Shown here in pieces: positions 4,316-38,215 of a stretch of 64,000 bases of DNA. The translations under genes and the position numbers were made by a program. The notes beneath the pieces were generated by a model. That model saw only the letters and a list, made by a program, of their open reading frames with translations. It did no database searches and had not been told where the DNA came from. The stretch covers positions 171,459-235,458 of IMG/VR virus record IMGVR_UViG_3300031997_000001; one strand, 5' to 3'. Position 1 is the stretch's first letter; every line of letters starts with the position of its first letter.

Positions 4316-4981
4316 ATGAAGAAATGCGCCTGGTGCAAGACGCCAAAGCCGAATTCGAAATTTCCCCTGCATTATCCAGTTTGTTTTAAGTGCTTGGCCT
4401 ATCGTGCGCGCAAAAGCAAGCCATGCAAGATTTGCGGAGTAACCAAACCAAAGAAAAAATTCCCCCCAGCCAGTCTTAGGTGTTATGCTTGTGCTTGGGT
4501 TTGTAAGCGTAAAGACCCCAAATACCGGGAAAAATGCAACGCGTACAACAGGCGCCGGTACAAGGAAGACGCAGCTTACAGACAACACTATCTCGCCAAA
4601 TGCCGGGTACGCAACAAAGAACGCTGGCGGCTGGGCTTGATACAAGCCTACGACGAAAGCTCCCCACGCAGGTGGCTTTTTGCAAAGACGCGCAGAGGGA
4701 GAACACACGGGCGACGCAGTAACTTCAAGTGGGGCGTTAGTCTGGATTTCCTGTGTGGTCTTTGGGAAGACCAAAAAGGCAAATGTGCTCTTTCTGGTCT
4801 TCCCATGACAATGCAACGATACAGGCTTGATGGCGCATCCATAGACCGGATCGACTCCACCAAAGGCTACGTGCCTGGGAACATCCAGCTTGTGTGCAAG
4901 GCCATCAACCTCGCGAAGAATAAGAACACGAACGAGGAGATGATGGCATTCATTAAGGCGCTCCGGGCTATTCCTAGATAA
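4316..4981 (+). CDS. HNH/His-Me-finger-type endonuclease with N-terminal CxxC repeats
   Basis: KCALSG...SIDRIDSTKGYVPGNIQLVCKAINLAK; lower GC; antisense to flanking genes. Confidence 0.8.
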   Translation: MKKCAWCKTPKPNSKFPLHYPVCFKCLAYRARKSKPCKICGVTKPKKKFPPASLRCYACAWVCKRKDPKYREKCNAYNRRRYKEDAAYRQHYLAKCRVRNKERWRLGLIQAYDESSPRRWLFAKTRRGRTHGRRSNFKWGVSLDFLCGLWEDQKGKCALSGLPMTMQRYRLDGASIDRIDSTKGYVPGNIQLVCKAINLAKNKNTNEEMMAFIKALRAIPR

Positions 4982-4997
4982 CTCCTTTGGTACGCAG

Positions 4998-5216
4998 TCA
5001 CTGCTTGACCTGCTGGCTGGCCTGTGTCATTTCTCTGATCCAGTCGACTGTCAGGTCTCCATGCTGCGCCCGCTGGGTCGGCTCGTCGCAGCCCTGCTCG
5101 ACGGCAAGGCCGAGGGCGCGAATGACCTCGAATGGGACGAAGGCGCAGACGCCGCCGACCTTGTCGAAGCCGTTGACTCGGACGAACTTTCCCCCGTTCA
5201 GGTTGTTGACCATCAT
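4998..5216 (-). CDS. hypothetical protein (72 aa)
   Basis: ATG overlapping the upstream stop; codon usage like its neighbours. Confidence 0.5.
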   Translation of the reverse strand: MMVNNLNGGKFVRVNGFDKVGGVCAFVPFEVIRALGLAVEQGCDEPTQRAQHGDLTVDWIREMTQASQQVKQ

Positions 5217-5401
5217 CCGTTCCCCTGCTTGACCTGGTTCTTGTCGGCCTGGACCACGTGGTCCATCCCCTTGTGCCGCTCCTCGATCTTGCCCAGGCTC
5301 TTGGCCAGATCCTCGGTGAAGGAGGCCGTACCCTGACCGTTGGCCCCCTCTGCATGGATCTTGACTTCCCCGTCGTTGATCTTGAGCACTATTTCTTTCA
5401 T
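5213..5401 (-). CDS. DUF2997-like protein (copy 1)
   Basis: MKEIVLKINDGEVKIHAEGANGQGTASFTEDLAKSLG fits the I.i..dG.v...v.G..G..C..t..le..LG pattern, with the Cys lost. Confidence 0.65.
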   Translation of the reverse strand: MKEIVLKINDGEVKIHAEGANGQGTASFTEDLAKSLGKIEERHKGMDHVVQADKNQVKQGNG

Positions 5402-5535
5402 CTTTCCTCCCCATTCATTATGCCTGAGACACTCCTCACTATTCGAGCTCCAACTTTCTTTCCCCGAGCTCCGCCTTGGTCGGAATGGTGACTGTCGTAA
5501 AGGAGAACATAGTGTTGTCCTTTCAGCCATAGGAT

Positions 5536-5817
5536 CTAGTACTGCCTCAGGGTGAGTTGGATCTCGTTCCCGTTGTTCATCCGGACGACGGTGTACCCCG
5601 CCTGCTTCGCCTTCGCGGTGGCGAGGGATGCGGCGTACTCGTTCTTGAACAGCTTCTCGAACCCGGGGTATTGCTCCTTGGGCTCGACCTTGTACATCCC
5701 GTTCGGGAGCTTGGTGATCTTGGACTCCCAGCCGTGGTCCTTCTTCAGCTTCTCCGCGGCTGCCTTCGCGGCTGCCTGGTCCTTGACCTCGATGCTGACC
5801 CTCGTGAAACAGGGCAC
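5536..5817 (-). CDS. DUF1257-like protein (copy 1)
   Basis: GTG start after GGAGG; PCFTRVSIEV.D...Y...A...GY.V; directly downstream of the AAA ATPase. Confidence 0.55.
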   Translation of the reverse strand: MPCFTRVSIEVKDQAAAKAAAEKLKKDHGWESKITKLPNGMYKVEPKEQYPGFEKLFKNEYAASLATAKAKQAGYTVVRMNNGNEIQLTLRQY

Positions 5818-33354: not shown

Positions 33355-34204
33355 TTATTTCCCTTTCATTTCATGGGCCGCAATCACCGCGTTGCAGACG
33401 GCACGGGCGGGGTGCTTGGCAGTGCCTTCCCAGTCGACCTCGTTCCACGCGTCATCCGCGGTTCCTACGACGTAGAACCACCCGGCTACCCACAGGTCAA
33501 GCTCTTCGTGGTAGATCAGGCTAAAGCGCCCGGTGAGAGCAGGTCGCTTGCCGACGCGCAGGCGCAGCCCTATCTTCTTGACCGCCTCCATCGCGTCATC
33601 AATGCATCGGGCGGGCGTCCAGGAGTGGGAATCCGGGATGTTCACCCACTCGCTTTCGAAGACGCCTCCGGTAGCGCGGTCGTCGCGCTCCCAGCAGCCG
33701 TGGTCATCGGCATAAGGCTTGGGAGACGGCCAGACGAGGTCCATCCCCTCCTTGTCCCAGGACCAGGACTTCCATGTCATGCCGAGGATCTTGGAGGCAA
33801 TGAAGACGTCTGCCTCGTCGTCGGTCATCGCTGCTATCTGTTTCTGGCTAAGCATGTTTCGCCTCATGGGCTGCAATGACTGCATTGCAGACGGCGCGGG
33901 CGGGGGCGCTATGCGACATCCAATCCACTACGGCACCCCATCCGGCCATCCACTTCTTCGTACCTAAATTCCAGACGAGACCAAAAGTCAATCCCTCTAA
34001 TTCCAGCCCCATCTTCCCCGCCGCCTCGACAGCCTGGTTGAGATCGGTGGCAAACTGGGCGGCATAAGAACTCGTTCGGCTGATATCTCCCGTCCACCAG
34101 GTGCCGTAGGAGAATGTCCACCCCATCACCTTCTCGGCCAGATACTTGCTGGCCTCCGCGTCGGTGAGTGCCTCGATCTGCTTGCGAGTAAGCAGGGTAA
34201 GCAT
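33355..34204 (-). CDS. two tandem phage ABA-sandwich (BC1872-like) domain paralogues (33355-33885, 33848-34204)
   Basis: Both show iA.kvmGw...[F/W]....id.A.eav.K...PARAVCNAVIAAHE; ML...QI.A.TD.EA starts. Confidence 0.65.
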
Positions 34205-34783
34205 TTTATCCTCCTGATGGCTGGTCCGTGGATTCCCGGAGGGCAGAAACGCTGTGGACTATGTCGTCCGCCGGGAGGCCGCACAAGCGGCAGGGTTCCT
34301 GACCGGCGAAGCGCTCCGCCTTGCCGTCAAACCCGTGCATCTTACACAGGGCTCGCTCGAGCTGCTGGACCCTCTGGCGAAGAGCTTCCGCGGTCGATTC
34401 CTGGAATCCTTGGGCTGTCATGTTAGATCACTGAAAGCTGGTCCGCAACCCGTGCTTCGGACAGGTCTTCGCTTCCCATTTCTCGCCCTTCTGAGGCAGG
34501 CGCAGCTTCCTGCTGGTCAGAGCACGCCAGGCAAGCCAGAGGTCAGTCAGCCTCTTGAACATCTTTATTCCTCCGACTGGATAACAATCCCTACCAGTGA
34601 AATACGGGTCCGAGAAGCATATCGAACTAGGTATGACACTGACATCTACACCATCTATCATGACAGAGGTTGTGCAATTCTGTTTTGCACCACCTACTTC
34701 TTTTCGTGCGATGCTTGCGCTTCAGTTTGGATGCTTTCATATTTCATCGAGGGCCTGGGCATTGCCGCCCAGGCCCTCTCTAT

Positions 34784-35398
34784 CTAGTCAATCGGCTCCC
34801 ACTTCAAGATCTTGAACTTGCCGAACACACCGCGGTAGGTCCCGATCCCGATGGCGTAGCCACCCTCCTGGATCAGGTTACGGATCTGCACTTCCTGGAT
34901 TTCGGTATTCGGAAGAATTGTCAGCTGGAACTCGAGCTCCCAAGGCAGCGGGAGGACCGGCCGGACCTTCGGGTTCGGCACCCCATCCTTCAGCCGGGCA
35001 ACCCGCCGGTCGATGTAGCAGCCCGACAGGGCGTCCTTATCCCCGTCGAACTTCCCGAACTTGATCGGCTGATTGTCCTTCAGGAAGGGGATCATCATCG
35101 GCTCGATGATGGTAAAGGAAAGGCACGAATTCGCAATCGACAGCCCCTTCTTGCCCCGCAGCCGCCTGGGCGCCGACACCGTGTTCTTGGCCGACAGGAA
35201 CGAGTGGATGTTCGCCGCCGGGAGGCAGATGTTGCGCTCTTCGTCCAGGTAGAGCTTCTGCATCGGCTCCAGCTTCGTGTCGTTGTCCCCGGCGTACCGG
35301 TCGAACATGACCGCCGTGATGCCCTGAAGCCGGACCAGCCGCCTGATCATGTCCTTCGTGCCGGCTTCCGCGACGACCGCCTTCGATTTCGCAACCAT
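34784..35398 (-). CDS. stand-alone Cas7-like RAMP protein (204 aa; Vipr-like)
   Basis: First strand VRLQGITAVMF, ICLPAANIHSFL helix motif, WELEFQL strand, C-terminal G-rich loop GGYAIGIGTYRGVFGKF; GGAG RBS 8 nt before ATG 35398. Confidence 0.8.
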   Translation of the reverse strand: MVAKSKAVVAEAGTKDMIRRLVRLQGITAVMFDRYAGDNDTKLEPMQKLYLDEERNICLPAANIHSFLSAKNTVSAPRRLRGKKGLSIANSCLSFTIIEPMMIPFLKDNQPIKFGKFDGDKDALSGCYIDRRVARLKDGVPNPKVRPVLPLPWELEFQLTILPNTEIQEVQIRNLIQEGGYAIGIGTYRGVFGKFKILKWEPID

Positions 35399-35417
35399 TG
35401 ACGGATCTCCAAAAAAG

Positions 35418-36003
35418 AAACCCTGCCTTGCCGCGCCGAGCCCGGCCAGGCCCTGCCCGGCAGCGCCGCGCCAAGCCTTGCCGTGCCTCGCCGTGCCGAA
35501 GATTCCTTTGTAAAAGCTAGCCTTGCCTCGCACTGCCCTGCCTCGCCCAGCCAGGCCGGGCCGGGCCTGGCCCCGCACCGCCTGGCCCCACCGGGCACCG
35601 CCTCGGACAGAAGATCTTGTAAGAAGAGCTGGCCTTGCCGTGCACTGCCGTGCCTCGCCCCGCCGGGCGCGGCCATGCCCTGCCTCACCTTGCCTTGCCT
35701 CGCCCAGCCGTGCCAGGCCGGGCCCGGTCAAGTTGGCAGTCAATGTTTCGTGTTGTAAGAAGAGCTAGCCTTGCCTCGCTGCGCCCTGCCCCGCCCCGCC
35801 TTGCCGCGCTTTGCCTCGCCCGGCCCGGCCGCGCCCCGCCCTGCAAAGCCCAGCCACGCCGTGCCGTACCTTGCCCGGCCGCGTCTTCACGTAATGCTTC
35901 TTGTAAAAGAGCTAGCCTTGCCTTGCCTTGCCCTGCCCCACCTGGCCCAGCCTCGCCGCCGCCTTGCCTTGCCTGGCCGCGCCCGGCCCGGCCGAGCCGT
36001 GCC
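35418..36003 (-). repeat. five-block GGY-NN pentamer array (putative guide-RNA array)
   Basis: Blocks 36003-35913 (18 units, one is 6 nt), 35880-35766 (23), 35724-35630 (19), 35602-35518 (17), 35497-35418 (16); 84/93 units begin GGY; linkers 20-41 nt all contain TTACAA. Confidence 0.9.
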
Positions 36004-36015
36004 CCGACTCAGACA

Positions 36016-36504
36016 TTACTCCAGCAGCAACATCGTCGCGGGCTTCATGTCCAGCTTCTTCTGGAGCGCGATGCAGGTCTCCAGCAGCCGCTCTCCGACC
36101 TTCGGCGACTCGATCTTCTTGTGCAGGCCCATCTTCGTGACCGCCGCGTTCAGCACCGCCTTCTGCTTGGCGTCGAGCGCCGTCATGTCGATGACAGCCA
36201 GCTGCCCGATCGTCTTCCTCGCCTTCCGGCCGATCCTCTGGCCCGCCTCGTCGGCCACCCCGACCGCCTCCTCGTTCGAGACCCGCTTGATTCCCACTCC
36301 CCGGATCGGACGCCAGAAAGCACGCTCGCGCCAGAGGGTCTTCAAGGCAGAGGCGACCACGTGTGCACCATTTCCGGCCAGCCGATGTGTGACTTCCGAC
36401 AACTTCTCATGCGACACAATCTCACCGACCGGCTTGCTCCGCAGGAACCGGATGAGTTCCTCCGTGTCTGCGGAACGCCGGAAGGCCGGACTCTTCCCGT
36501 CCAT
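36016..36504 (-). CDS. putative winged-helix DNA-binding protein heading the array operon (162 aa)
   Basis: GGAGG RBS, ATG 36504; helical N-terminus then FWRPIRGVGIKRV wing-like hairpin; stop lies 12 nt before array block 1. Confidence 0.6.
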   Translation of the reverse strand: MDGKSPAFRRSADTEELIRFLRSKPVGEIVSHEKLSEVTHRLAGNGAHVVASALKTLWRERAFWRPIRGVGIKRVSNEEAVGVADEAGQRIGRKARKTIGQLAVIDMTALDAKQKAVLNAAVTKMGLHKKIESPKVGERLLETCIALQKKLDMKPATMLLLE

Positions 36505-36551
36505 TTCGTGCCTCCCGAAAGGATTGTCGAAAACCTTCACCCAACTAGATC

Positions 36552-36581
36552 ATTAAAATACAGAGGGGAATCTCCCGTCAA
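36552..36581 (-). promoter_or_regulatory. sigma70-type promoter TTGACG-N18-TTTAAT driving wHTH-array-RAMP
   Basis: Same N18 spacing and similar spacer (GGAGATTCCCCTC) as the 10982 promoter. Confidence 0.6.
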
Positions 36582-36684
36582 GGATTTCGTTGTATCTAGA
36601 GCAATACAACAATAGGAGCGAGCTCGCGGGTCAAACGTATCTCACGGAAGTGCGGATTATTCCCCCTTACTAAGGAGGCACGAC

Positions 36685-37353
36685 ATGAGTAAGCAGGTCA
36701 AGAGCGACGGCCGGGTCCAGAAGGTAATGCGGATGGTATTCGACTACGGCACGCCGAATAGGTTCACTAACGAAGAACGTGCCAAGGCCATCACATACGA
36801 GCACCTGAGGTGCTGCGATCTGAAGACCATTGAGGACATATATAACGCGTGTTCCATGTTTGATATCCTGGATAGGCCCTGCGGCGACGGGGACATGGCC
36901 GTGCGCGGCAAGCTCGAGAAATTCATCGAGATTAGGAAGAAACAGTCGCCGACATATCACACGAAGCCAACCCAAATTGACGACGCTGAGATCAGAGAAC
37001 TTTTGGCGGAGGCTTGTTCGCCTGAGCCAAAATTGGTGCGCCGCCCTGGAATGGCCACGCCCGAGGAAGGGCTCCGCAAGTGGGTTACCGAAAAGGTCGC
37101 TTCCGAGATCCCCAAACAGATCCGGCGGGATTTTGGAGGGAAGGGTAGGGACGAGTCCATTCTCTGCCTGGCGAAGCAGTTGGGCCTCGAGCGGTACATT
37201 AGTTCAACGACAGCACGGGCCACGGTCGCTATCTCTGTCTATGATCTCCTGGGGAAACAGATCGAAGGATGCCGCAAGCGGGTGGCGTCCAAAGTGGAGG
37301 AACTCAAGAGGCGGGCGGAGCGCGGTGATTCTGCAGCCAGAACAGATTCCTAG
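36685..37353 (+). CDS. hypothetical protein, divergent from the RAMP operon
   Basis: AAGGAGG RBS; 222 aa. Confidence 0.7.
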   Translation: MSKQVKSDGRVQKVMRMVFDYGTPNRFTNEERAKAITYEHLRCCDLKTIEDIYNACSMFDILDRPCGDGDMAVRGKLEKFIEIRKKQSPTYHTKPTQIDDAEIRELLAEACSPEPKLVRRPGMATPEEGLRKWVTEKVASEIPKQIRRDFGGKGRDESILCLAKQLGLERYISSTTARATVAISVYDLLGKQIEGCRKRVASKVEELKRRAERGDSAARTDS

Positions 37354-37357
37354 AGAT

Positions 37358-37392
37358 GGGGCCTGGACCAGCCACTTGCTGGTCCAGGCCCC
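37358..37392. terminator. perfect 15-bp hairpin between convergent genes
   Basis: GGGGCCTGGACCAGC-CACTT-GCTGGTCCAGGCCCC. Confidence 0.7.
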
Positions 37393-37633: not shown

Positions 37634-38215
37634 TCATGGGCGTCCTACTTTCCTGAGTGCGGCGTGCAGGGCGGCGATATATTCCTGCTCGAGCCCCACA
37701 TCCGTGCCGCTCAGCACCTCAAACAGGAGCTTGGACTCCTCCCCATATACCTGGACGAAATCCGCCGGCGCATCGCCCATTTCCAGGAGGTTGTCCGTCC
37801 GGTCTATTAGCTTGATCAGCTTAGCCTGCACGGAGGCGGTAAGCAGGTGATCCCGGTCCATCTTCTTGCGTTCGGCCCGGGGCAGTTCTGGGTGCTGCTT
37901 GGACGGATTGGTGAGTTCCAGGACCAGGTCGGCCACCCGCTCGCCGAAATGACACTCATCGCCAGTCTTCTTCCCCAGGAAGTAGTCAGTATGGAACGAG
38001 AGCCGTATATCGCGCGGGCTGGCCTGGGGGCAGTCCTCCAGCACGTCATGAAGCCACGCCGCACAGACGCCTTCCTCGGTCCCCAAGGGATGACGAGTCA
38101 GGCGGGCAGCCACCCGGGCGGGGTGCACAATGTACGGGGCACCGGTATATTTACGGACCTGCTGCTGGTGGTAGCCAGCCGCCACGCGCGCTGCGATCAG
38201 GATGTTGTTATTCAT
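37634..38215 (-). CDS. RelA/SpoT-type HD hydrolase (small alarmone hydrolase/Mesh1-like)
   Basis: H..Q.RK..G.PYI.HP..VA, AAWLHDVLED, V.ELT, IKL.DR.DNL. Confidence 0.85.
   Translation of the reverse strand: MNNNILIAARVAAGYHQQQVRKYTGAPYIVHPARVAARLTRHPLGTEEGVCAAWLHDVLEDCPQASPRDIRLSFHTDYFLGKKTGDECHFGERVADLVLELTNPSKQHPELPRAERKKMDRDHLLTASVQAKLIKLIDRTDNLLEMGDAPADFVQVYGEESKLLFEVLSGTDVGLEQEYIAALHAALRKVGRP

What the first reader, a model, noticed from the sequence alone, without database searches (positions are those of the whole stretch)
36016..37353. Accessory genes of the RAMP array: upstream wHTH-like gene and divergent orphan
Seen: the 162-aa gene stops 12 nt before block 1 and shares the host-type promoter. 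A 222-aa orphan is transcribed divergently from the same 180-bp gap and is closed by a perfect 15-bp hairpin. Inference: the wHTH-like protein may be a regulator or partner of the RNP. A sigma70 promoter implies early or lysogen-stage expression, consistent with exclusion of competing phages. Neither gene looks like a nuclease, so a binding/silencing output is more likely than cleavage.
Basis: inference. Interest (0 to 1): 0.6.

Follow-up and report, generated by a model that had tools for sequence, protein, structure and literature searches.

The report
VIPR accessory gene (Vap1-like) plus bystander
The 162-aa gene is a winged-helix accessory protein (Vap1 family) of a phage VIPR RNA-guided silencing system described in 2026 preprints, so the locus is a new example of a known system; the divergent 222-aa gene is an unrelated neighbour.

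Summary
The sequence features are at the stated coordinates. The "RAMP array" is a VIPR locus (Viral Interference Programmable Repeat; bioRxiv 10.64898/2026.04.26.720920). It holds a Vipr RAMP gene (34784-35398, -) preceded by five vrRNA blocks of 16-23 GGC-NN units (35418-36003, -).

Gene A (36016-36504, -) folds as an N-terminal winged helix plus a helical C-terminal domain (pLDDT 95). Word-based search found one relative. A profile search found 2176 clusters.

In 80 loci fetched through a sister Vipr clade, 71 carry an A-like gene on the same strand, 63 of them downstream of vipr as called. The A-family profile hits the gene next to vipr in phage SUSP1, by position the published vap1 (23 bits, colinear). 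Published deletions show that vap1 is needed to protect SUSP1 from its satellite.

In the window's own Vipr clade only 3 of 104 loci carry A. There it lies upstream of vipr, here ahead of the whole guide array.

Gene B (36685-37353, +) has three homologues. The one on a contig long enough to judge has no Vipr and no array within 10 kb, and B matches none of about 200 VIPR loci.

The promoter and timing claims are untested. No natural targets were found.

The parts
36016..36504 (-). Gene A: 162-aa Vap1-family accessory protein. Winged helix at residues 9-75, helical domain at 76-161, pI 10.1.
   Evidence: ORF and RBS. AF2 pLDDT 95.4. wHTH matches. Family of 2176 clusters. Adjacent to vipr in 71/80 loci. 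Homology to the SUSP1 gene next to vipr.
36552..36581 (-). Candidate sigma-70-like promoter for A, the vrRNAs and vipr: TTGACG, 18 nt, TTTAAT.
   Evidence: Read from the sequence. Not called by the consensus scan. Unverified.
35913..36003 (-). vrRNA block 1: two runs of 9 GGC-NN units with a 1-nt phase slip at 35958, then a tail GCTCTTTTACAAG...
35766..35880 (-). vrRNA block 2: 23 units, ending GGCAA GGCTA, plus a tail GCTCTTCTTACAA...
35630..35724 (-). vrRNA block 3: 19 units plus a tail.
35518..35602 (-). vrRNA block 4: 17 units plus a tail.
35418..35497 (-). vrRNA block 5: 16 units, ending 19 nt before the vipr ATG.
34784..35398 (-). vipr: 204-aa RAMP (Cas7-like), the guide-binding protein of the system.
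   Evidence: AF2 pLDDT 90. Foldseek top hits Csm3/Cmr4/Cas7-11, probability 1.0. Best and only significant PDB sequence hit 'SUSP1 Vipr protein', E 0.0025. hhalign to SUSP1 Vipr 88%. Arrays flank the gene in about 100 loci.
34751..34776 (-). 10-bp perfect GC-rich hairpin just after the vipr stop; likely end of the operon.
   Evidence: Read from the sequence.
36685..37353 (+). Gene B: 222-aa protein of unknown function. A neighbour, not part of the VIPR module.
37358..37392 (.). Perfect 15-bp hairpin between convergent B and the 81-aa ORF; no T-run.

Best explanation
The region is one end of a VIPR locus.

Reading on the minus strand, a promoter in the 180-bp gap (inferred) drives gene A. Then come five vrRNA guides, each 16-23 GGC-NN units plus a short conserved tail, and then vipr. 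The unit ends at a hairpin after vipr.

Vipr is a RAMP. In the published SUSP1 system it polymerises along the vrRNA, buries each GGY triplet and presents the NN dinucleotides. These read double-stranded DNA with a one-base skip and silence transcription of competing mobile elements. That mechanism comes from the literature and was not tested here.

Gene A is a member of the Vap1 family, the basic winged-helix accessory protein that normally sits beside vipr. Its most conserved positions lie in the recognition helix (A53) and the wing (G71, R74), and K73 is invariant among its three closest relatives. The conserved activity is therefore most likely nucleic-acid binding (inferred). It most likely potentiates silencing by the Vipr-vrRNA filament, as Vap1 does in SUSP1. 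How it does so is not known.

Gene B is an ordinary neighbouring phage gene transcribed the other way.
For: The system is VIPR:
- The core model is RAMP/Cas7-like.
- The family profiles hit 'SUSP1 Vipr protein' in the PDB: E 1.3e-11 for the sister clade and E 0.0025 for the window's own clade.
- hhalign gives 88% probability, and jackhmmer joins the two clades.
- Arrays have the consensus G93 G97 C83 N N, a median of 15 units, and lie on the gene's strand in about 100 loci.
- Lag-5 periodicity gives 206 arrays, against 1, 23 and 1 at lags 4, 6 and 7.

A is the Vap1 family:
- The model has pLDDT 95.4 with H-b-H-H-b-b topology. PurR, BirA, OmpR and ScpB winged helices match at Z up to 7.9, rmsd 2.4 A over 66 residues.
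- The profile search found 2176 relatives of 150-180 aa.
- 71 of 80 loci fetched through Vipr alone have an A-like gene on the same strand.
- All 17 A-fetched loci with enough flank have a Vipr next door.
- The only A-profile hit in the 90.7-kb SUSP1 genome is the ORF abutting vipr (E 4e-4). hhalign gives E 4.8e-5 and the 150-sequence HMM gives 23.4 bits, colinear over about 110 residues.

Literature:
- Loci 'typically' hold vipr plus vap. Some vaps, including those of type II (the type of SUSP1), are predicted DNA binders, and winged-helix-like domains are among those shown. vap1 enhances protection (10.64898/2026.04.26.720920).
- A SUSP1 delta-vap1 mutant loses 10^4 in plaquing on a satellite lysogen, like delta-vipr (10.64898/2026.10.15.759431).

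Stability: A, the arrays and vipr are identical in contigs of two other sediment samples.
Against: - The sequence link from A to SUSP1 Vap1 is weak taken alone: 16-23 bits and hhalign probability 68%. It leans on synteny.
- I identified SUSP1 vap1 as ALH47068.1 from its position beside vipr and from the published 1,114-bp vipr-vap1 deletion, not from a stated accession.
- In the window's own Vipr clade 101 of 104 loci have no A-like gene within 3 kb, so this clade's Vipr evidently works without it.
- The gene order here (A, then five guides, then vipr) is the minority arrangement.
- There is no RNA evidence for the vrRNAs or for co-transcription.
- No natural target was found for any of the four guides searched.
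- The fold of A with Vipr gave no verdict.
Confidence: 0.78

Rival explanations
1. A is only a transcriptional autoregulator. As a winged-helix repressor it binds an operator in the 180-bp A-B gap and sets the level of the VIPR operon (and perhaps of B), with no role in target silencing itself.
For: - The winged-helix fold is typical of repressors.
- A is the first gene of the putative operon, directly behind the divergent gap.
- A 7-bp inverted repeat, GTTGTAT-N8-ATACAAC (36589-36610), lies just upstream of the candidate -35.
Against: - In the published assay vap1 was expressed from a separate plasmid while VIPR ran from a heterologous pBAD promoter, and it still enhanced protection (methods of 10.64898/2026.04.26.720920). 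That is hard to explain by control of the native promoter.
- In most loci A-like genes lie downstream of vipr, often behind an array, not at a promoter.
- A 7-bp inverted repeat in 180 bp is about what chance gives.
Confidence: 0.12
2. A is an unrelated phage regulator that lies beside the array by chance, or is a cargo gene captured between arrays. It has no functional tie to Vipr.
For: - Only 3 of 104 loci of the window's Vipr clade have it.
- Genes that follow arrays in that clade are extremely diverse: 76 clusters among 190 array-following ORFs.
Against: - 71 of 80 sister-clade loci have it, and all 17 A-fetched loci with enough flank have a Vipr next door.
- It always lies on the vipr strand.
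- It is homologous to the SUSP1 gene next to vipr.
- The three A-bearing loci of the window's clade fall in one 14-tip subclade, and the window and L002 are sisters.
Confidence: 0.04
3. B is a second accessory protein of the locus, or a counter-measure tied to it, sharing the regulatory gap with A.
For: - It is transcribed divergently from the same 180-bp gap.
- It is basic (pI 9.1).
- It has no known family, so nothing excludes a new function.
Against: - Its 50% homologue P0004 sits in a 40.7-kb phage-like contig with no Vipr and no array within 10 kb either side.
- It has no homologue in any of 206 loci (1.27 Mb) around VIPR genes.
- Only 3 relatives were found in 5.8 billion proteins.
Confidence: 0.05

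Closest known systems
VIPR system of Escherichia phage SUSP1 (type II; vrRNA1 - vipr - vap1 - three vrRNAs), bioRxiv 10.64898/2026.04.26.720920, .720927 and 10.64898/2026.10.15.759431
   Same: - Phage-encoded minimal locus.
- A Vipr RAMP of about 200 aa with the C-terminal G-x-G-x-[FW]-R-x-x-F-G-[KR] loop.
- Same-strand arrays of GGY-NN pentanucleotides ending in a conserved tail.
- A small basic accessory protein with a winged-helix-like domain beside vipr.
- No nuclease gene.
   Different: - Gene order is vap, five vrRNAs, vipr, rather than vrRNA, vipr, vap, vrRNAs.
- The constant triplet is GGC rather than mostly GGT.
- Guides are longer: 16-23 units here, against the 9-16 and 10-12 units reported for vrRNAs in the two papers.
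- The tail is short (GCTCTTYTTACAA) and no pseudoknot was tested.
- Vipr is only distantly related (PDB hit E 0.0025).
- The window's Vipr clade usually lacks any Vap1-like gene.
- The carrier is an uncultivated 235-kb element from sediment metagenomes, and its natural targets are unknown.
Type III CRISPR-Cas backbone (Csm3/Cmr4 Cas7 filament on crRNA, with the Cas11 small subunit)
   Same: - Same RAMP fold (Foldseek probability 1.0, TM about 0.5).
- One protein subunit per short RNA register.
- A small helical partner protein is encoded nearby.
   Different: - The register is 5 nt with a sequence-specific GGC, not 6 nt and sequence-independent.
- There are no CRISPR repeats, no Cas6/Cas10/Cas1/Cas2, and no adaptation module.
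- A is a winged helix plus a helical hairpin. No Cas11 chain appeared among its 50 best VIA fold matches.
Winged-helix DNA-binding domains of bacterial repressors (PurR N-terminal domain 1o57, BirA, GntR/MarR, OmpR-type)
   Same: - The N-terminal 9-75 of A superposes on them: Z 7.9, rmsd 2.4 A over 66 residues for 1o57, and 2.8 A over about 73 for the AdeR DNA-binding domain.
   Different: - No sequence family membership: Pfam, NCBIfam, PHROGs and PADLOC all gave nothing.
- The C-terminal helical domain has no specific match.
- The genomic context is a guide-RNA system, not a metabolic operon.

Membership tests
VIPR system | Vipr protein: a single-RRM RAMP with G-loop, homologous to SUSP1 Vipr | tested here: met
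   AF2 pLDDT 90, Foldseek hits to Csm3/Cmr4/Cas7-11. The A1 profile gives 'SUSP1 Vipr protein' 36pp_D at E 0.0025 as its best and only significant PDB hit. hhalign 88%. jackhmmer links it to the clade that hits 36pp_D at 1.3e-11.
VIPR system | vrRNA genes: tandem GGY-NN pentanucleotides on the vipr strand in flanking intergenic DNA | tested here: met
   Five blocks of 16-23 GGC-NN units at 35418-36003 (-), the only such arrays in the 235-kb genome. The same arrangement is seen in about 100 homologous loci.
VIPR system | Invariable 3' tail after each repeat tract | tested here: inconclusive
   Blocks 1-4 all end GGCAA GGCTA/GGCCA followed by GCT(C)TT(Y)TTACAA. Tail structure was not analysed. 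No hammerhead or other Rfam hit.
VIPR system | vrRNAs are expressed as roughly 100-nt RNAs and co-purify with Vipr | not testable with these tools
   Only DNA runs from sediment metagenomes hold the locus.
VIPR system | Guides match natural targets by the NNx (1-nt skip) rule and do not match their own genome | tested here: inconclusive
   No self-target: the best NN match in the own genome does not exceed the best score of 20 shuffled guides. Exact patterns of 11-12 units from four guides gave 0 hits in viral contigs and metagenome contigs. Mismatch-tolerant search of the collections was not possible.
Vap1 (vipr-accessory protein 1) | Sequence homology to SUSP1 Vap1 | tested here: met
   The A-family profile finds only ALH47068.1 in the whole SUSP1 genome (E 4e-4). 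hhalign E 4.8e-5, probability 68%, 89 columns. The 150-sequence HMM gives 23.4 bits, colinear 28-139 against 34-142. This is weak but specific. ALH47068.1 is taken as vap1 by position.
Vap1 (vipr-accessory protein 1) | Encoded next to vipr on the same strand | tested here: met
   Window: same strand, 617 nt upstream of vipr with the guide array between. Family: 71 of 80 Vipr-fetched loci and all 17 A-fetched loci with enough flank.
Vap1 (vipr-accessory protein 1) | Predicted winged-helix-like DNA-binding fold (paper fig. S21) | tested here: met
   Model pLDDT 95.4, H12-22 b29-31 H32-39 H47-59 b63-67 b71-75. wHTH matches. SUSP1 Vap1 itself was not folded here.
Vap1 (vipr-accessory protein 1) | Required for, or enhances, VIPR protection | not testable with these tools
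   Shown for SUSP1 only (10.64898/2026.04.26.720920, Fig. 4E; 10.64898/2026.10.15.759431, Fig. 1F).
CRISPR-Cas type III | CRISPR repeat-spacer array and Cas10/Cas6/Cas11 partners | tested here: not met
   No repeat-spacer array. No match in Pfam, NCBIfam or PADLOC for the three genes scanned (A, B, vipr), nor in Pfam and PHROGs for five further neighbouring ORFs. The array period is 5 nt.

The most novel reading that the evidence does not exclude
The Vap1-like gene was recruited secondarily into a Vipr clade that normally works alone and was placed at the head of the guide array. There its winged helix might do something other than boost silencing. For example, it could load or cap the Vipr filament at the 5' end of the polycistronic guide transcript, or recognise the RNA-DNA triplex. 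Because the Vap1 mechanism is still unknown, this vap-optional clade would be a natural system for finding out what Vap1 adds.
Probability: 0.15. Interest if true: 0.5.

Novelty: new member of a known kind. Interest (0 to 1): 0.3.

Why it matters
This result mainly files the finding correctly. The "RAMP array" is a VIPR locus and its upstream gene is the system's known class of accessory protein, so it is not a new mechanism.

It adds some numbers that the held text of the preprints does not give:
- The Vap1-like family has about 2200 clusters at 50% identity, and word-based search misses almost all of them.
- Its linkage to vipr is 89% in one clade and 3% in another.
- It can sit upstream of a five-guide array.

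The vap-optional clade is a natural comparison for asking what Vap1 does, which the papers leave open.

Tried and rejected
- **Family scans.** Pfam, PHROGs, PADLOC and NCBIfam gave nothing for A or B. The sub-threshold YlxR and SOAR hits for A were ignored.
- **Cultured phages.** tblastn of A and B against 50,697 phage records gave no match.
- **Single-sequence pattern scans** of viral contigs with Vipr and with A found nothing. The 61-sequence A alignment was too divergent for pattern search, so a 13-sequence subset was used instead.
- **Rfam and tRNA scans** found nothing in the window.
- **Early ideas dropped once the fold and the literature were in.** These were a TRAP-like leader attenuator, G-quadruplex leaders, CsrA-type decoys, autoregulatory leaders in the manner of T4 gp32, and integron-like cassette boundaries.
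- **Complex prediction** of Vipr with A scored 0.00, no verdict. This is evidence neither for nor against binding.
- **Target search.** Exact NNx patterns from vr2 and vr3 (viral contigs) and from vr5 and vr4 (metagenome contigs) gave 0 hits. The own-genome scan gave nothing above the best shuffled guide.
- **Protein atlas for B** gave no usable hit, and the atlas model is poor (pLDDT 0.52).
- **Synteny of L003 with the window.** Only scattered homologues were found, so there is no clean with-and-without comparison of the insertion site.
- **Cas11.** The idea that A's helical domain is Cas11-like found no support. No Cas11 chain was among the 50 best VIA matches, and the helical hits are generic hairpins.
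- **Literature.** Searches for 'pentanucleotide repeats' and 'GGCNN' found nothing relevant. The VIPR papers came up with RAMP, Cas7, prophage and tandem repeats.
Full report
**Observation**

All the stated features are in the sequence.
- Gene A is a minus-strand ORF, 36016-36504, 162 aa from an ATG. GGGAGG lies 6 nt upstream of that ATG.
- A's stop lies exactly 12 nt before the first GGC unit of the array, at 36003.
- The gap to the divergent gene B (36685-37353, 222 aa, RBS AAGGAGG) is 180 bp.
- A perfect 15-bp hairpin (37358-37372 / 37378-37392) follows B and separates it from a convergent 81-aa ORF.
- A sigma-70-like TTGACG, 18 nt, TTTAAT (36581-36552, minus strand) can be read in the gap. 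The consensus scan did not call it, and promoter-like sites are no commoner here than in shuffles. The promoter remains a plausible reading only.

**What the array is**

Downstream of A on the minus strand lie five blocks of pentanucleotide repeats:
- 36003-35913, about 18 units with a 1-nt slip
- 35880-35766, 23 units
- 35724-35630, 19 units
- 35602-35518, 17 units
- 35497-35418, 16 units

Blocks 1-4 each end in GGCAA GGCTA/GGCCA followed by a short conserved tail, GCT(C)TT(Y)TTACAA. The 204-aa gene follows at 34784-35398, and after it a 10-bp hairpin. This is the only such array in the 235-kb genome that holds the window.

The 204-aa protein has more than 2100 close relatives (55-65% identity, no Pfam family). 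I fetched about 100 loci from viral and genome collections and one cultured Burkholderia phage. In nearly all of them the gene is flanked, on its own strand, by arrays with consensus G(93%) G(97%) C(83%) N N and a median of 15 units.

Its AlphaFold model (pLDDT 90) matches type III Cas7 RAMPs (Csm3, Cmr4), type VII Cas7 and Cas7-11, at Foldseek probability 1.0 and TM about 0.5.

**The system is already described**

A literature search found three 2026 preprints on VIPR, Viral Interference Programmable Repeat systems. According to them:
- A phage-encoded ancestral RAMP, Vipr, polymerises on vrRNAs made of alternating GGY and NN segments plus a 3' tail.
- The NN dinucleotides read double-stranded DNA with a one-base skip.
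- The complex silences transcription of competing phages and satellites (10.64898/2026.04.26.720920 and .720927).

Membership was tested directly.
- The profile of the window's Vipr family has "SUSP1 Vipr protein" (36pp_D) as its best and only significant PDB sequence hit, E 0.0025.
- The sister-clade profile hits the same chain at 1.3e-11.
- hhalign to the SUSP1 gene gives 88% probability.
- jackhmmer joins the two clades.

**Gene A**

Word-based search found a single relative, P0002 at 66% identity. It lies on a 2.1-kb contig with the order array, A, array, vipr, array.

A profile search of 1.84 billion representatives then showed that A belongs to a large, fast-evolving family. There were 2176 hits at E<=1e-3 and 588 at E<=1e-10, and nearly all of the 150 best hits listed are about 150-180 aa long.

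With an alignment of 61 members the model reaches pLDDT 95.4. It shows the H-b-H-H-b-b winged-helix topology in residues 9-75, followed by a helical domain.
- Foldseek lists mostly wHTH regulators, at weak E-values.
- VIA-align gives Z 7.9, rmsd 2.4 A over 66 residues to the PurR N-terminal winged helix. NaeI, ScpB, BirA and OmpR-type domains lie close behind.
- The C-terminal matches are generic helical hairpins.

The protein is basic (pI 10.1). Its best-conserved positions (A53, G71, R74 and the "RGVGxKRL" wing) lie in the recognition helix and the wing.

- *From the A side.* Three A-family members looked up at random lie beside a Vipr homologue, an array, or both. All 15 viral loci fetched through an A-family motif have a Vipr gene immediately upstream.
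- *From the Vipr side, blind to A.* Of 80 viral loci fetched with the sister-clade Vipr alignment, 71 have an A-like gene on the same strand. In 63 it lies downstream of vipr as called and in 8 upstream. Two of the nine without it end too soon after vipr to hold it.
- *In the window's own Vipr clade.* Only 3 of 104 loci carry an A-like gene within 3 kb: the window, L002 and L011. In all three it lies upstream of vipr, and in L002 and L011 between two arrays. They fall in one 14-of-93-tip subclade, and the window and L002 are sisters with support 0.94.

So A is a conserved partner of the Vipr superfamily, but it is optional in this clade.

**Is A Vap1?**

[quoted passage not shown] They also say that type II, VI and VII vaps are predicted DNA-binding proteins, and winged-helix-like domains are among the examples shown for types II, III and VII. 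They report that vap1 enhances protection. A SUSP1 delta-vap1 mutant loses 10^4 in plaquing on a satellite lysogen, like delta-vipr (10.64898/2026.10.15.759431).

In the SUSP1 genome (KT454805.2) the Vipr profile finds ALH47069.1 (28474-29061, -). The A-family profile finds one place only, the abutting ORF ALH47068.1 (28031-28471, -), at E 4e-4.
- hhalign gives E 4.8e-5, probability 68%.
- A 150-sequence HMM gives 23.4 bits over a colinear stretch of about 110 residues.
- GGT-NN arrays flank the pair as published.

The sequence signal is weak but specific. Together with the fold and the synteny, I take A to be a Vap1-family member. I identified ALH47068.1 as vap1 from its position and from the published 1,114-bp vipr-vap1 deletion, not from a stated accession.

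**Gene B**

B has no family match in any library. It has no phage-record match, no atlas lead, and only three homologues at 44-50% identity.

The homologue on a contig long enough to judge lies in a 40.7-kb phage-like contig. That contig has no Vipr and no array within 10 kb on either side. The other contigs that carry a B homologue are only 1.3-1.5 kb long. None of 206 loci (1.27 Mb) around VIPR genes encodes a B homologue.

B is a real gene: it has an RBS, conserved homologues, and a hairpin at its end. It is a neighbour, not an accessory gene.

**Mechanism, and what is shown against what is inferred**

- *Shown here:* the anatomy, the folds, the family sizes, the linkage, and the homology to the SUSP1 proteins.
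- *Taken from the literature:* filament assembly on GGY, NN read-out with a one-base skip, transcriptional silencing of rival elements, and the need for Vap1.
- *Inferred:* A, the five guides and vipr form one transcript from the gap promoter to the hairpin after vipr. A binds nucleic acid through its winged helix and potentiates silencing.

A pure autoregulator role for A is less likely. In the published assay Vap1 helped when VIPR was driven from a foreign promoter.

The preprint associates nuclease-type vaps with other VIPR types and DNA-binding vaps with repression.

Timing of expression could not be tested. Only DNA runs from sediment metagenomes hold the locus.

Contigs from two other sediment samples carry the locus without a single difference. 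One covers vipr, the arrays and nearly all of A (34700-36560); the other runs from the start of vipr into A (35246-36394). Variant contigs exist for the 36543-36651 part of the gap.

**Targets**

Using the published NNx rule, none of the five guides matches its own genome better than the best of 20 shuffled guides. Exact 11-12-unit patterns from four guides found nothing in the viral or metagenome collections. The rivals this locus is aimed at remain unknown.

**Verdict**

What is new relative to the held text of the preprints:
- the size and divergence of the Vap1-like family;
- its 89% against 3% linkage in two Vipr clades;
- the vap-first, five-guide arrangement;
- in related loci, constant triplets other than GGY (see below).

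Noticed in passing
L108 2650-2795, 3376-3494, 3987-4091; L160 3278-3501; L111 2728-2875, 4014-4105; L105 1373-1451; L109 2592-2697, 3992-4079: In Vipr/Vap1-like loci of the sister clade the 5-nt arrays keep their period, but the constant triplet differs. It is GAC-NN in L108 and L160, CAC-NN in L111, and CGC-NN in L105 and L109. The motif is the same on both sides of a gene within a locus. The preprint lists NNNGG, YNNNG and NNNNG variants. GAC and CAC (YNNGA, YNNCA) are not among those named in the held text.
   Followed up: partly
window 35958 (minus strand, inside block 1): Block 1 consists of two 9-unit runs separated by a 1-nt phase slip (GGCGG c GGCGA). This may be two short guides, a degenerate unit, or something like the 'staggered' arrays mentioned in the preprint.
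   Followed up: no
L056 3007-3621 and 4730-5341: One viral locus carries two Vipr paralogues from the two clades, each with arrays around it. An HMM search found no A-like gene in this locus.
   Followed up: no
L005-L104, ORFs directly behind arrays: Genes that follow the arrays downstream of vipr in the window's clade are very diverse: 76 clusters among 190 array-following ORFs, mostly singletons. The clade therefore has no common accessory gene.
   Followed up: partly
window 36543-36651: In sample X8, contigs with 8-10 differences coexist with the identical form across the A-B intergenic region. In the same and another sample, contigs spanning parts of vipr, the arrays and A show no difference. 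Many short contigs from the same sediments match the arrays only partly, so other GGC-NN arrays are common there.
   Followed up: partly
window 36589-36610: A 7-bp inverted repeat, GTTGTAT-N8-ATACAAC, lies just upstream of the candidate -35 of gene A. It could be an operator, but a repeat of this size in 180 bp is about what chance gives.
   Followed up: no
window 37634-38215 (-), 33848-34204 (-), 33355-33885 (-): Neighbouring genes are an HD_4-domain phosphohydrolase (Pfam E 1.5e-12; phrog_990), one small protein with a sub-threshold match to the Phage_ABA_S domain, and an adjacent small protein with a similar C-terminal sequence but no family match. No tRNA or Rfam family was found in the 64-kb window. 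The carrier is a single 235,458-bp contig with 57% GC and many small ORFs, seen only in sediment metagenomes.
   Followed up: no
gene A profile (alignment A3), positions 10-53: The only PDB sequence matches of the A-family profile are sub-threshold hits (E 0.007-0.03) to the helix-turn-helix region of O6-alkylguanine-DNA alkyltransferases. From my own knowledge, not tested here, that motif binds the DNA minor groove.
   Followed up: no
L001 (Burkholderia phage vB_E436, PQ789831.1) 4864-5582: A cultured temperate Burkholderia phage carries a Vipr of the window's clade (58.5% identity) behind a single 15-unit GG[C/A]-NN array. The gene upstream reads like a PAPS-reductase-type enzyme by eye (not scanned) and no A-like gene is present. 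It is annotated 'hypothetical protein' and could serve as a laboratory model for this clade.
   Followed up: partly
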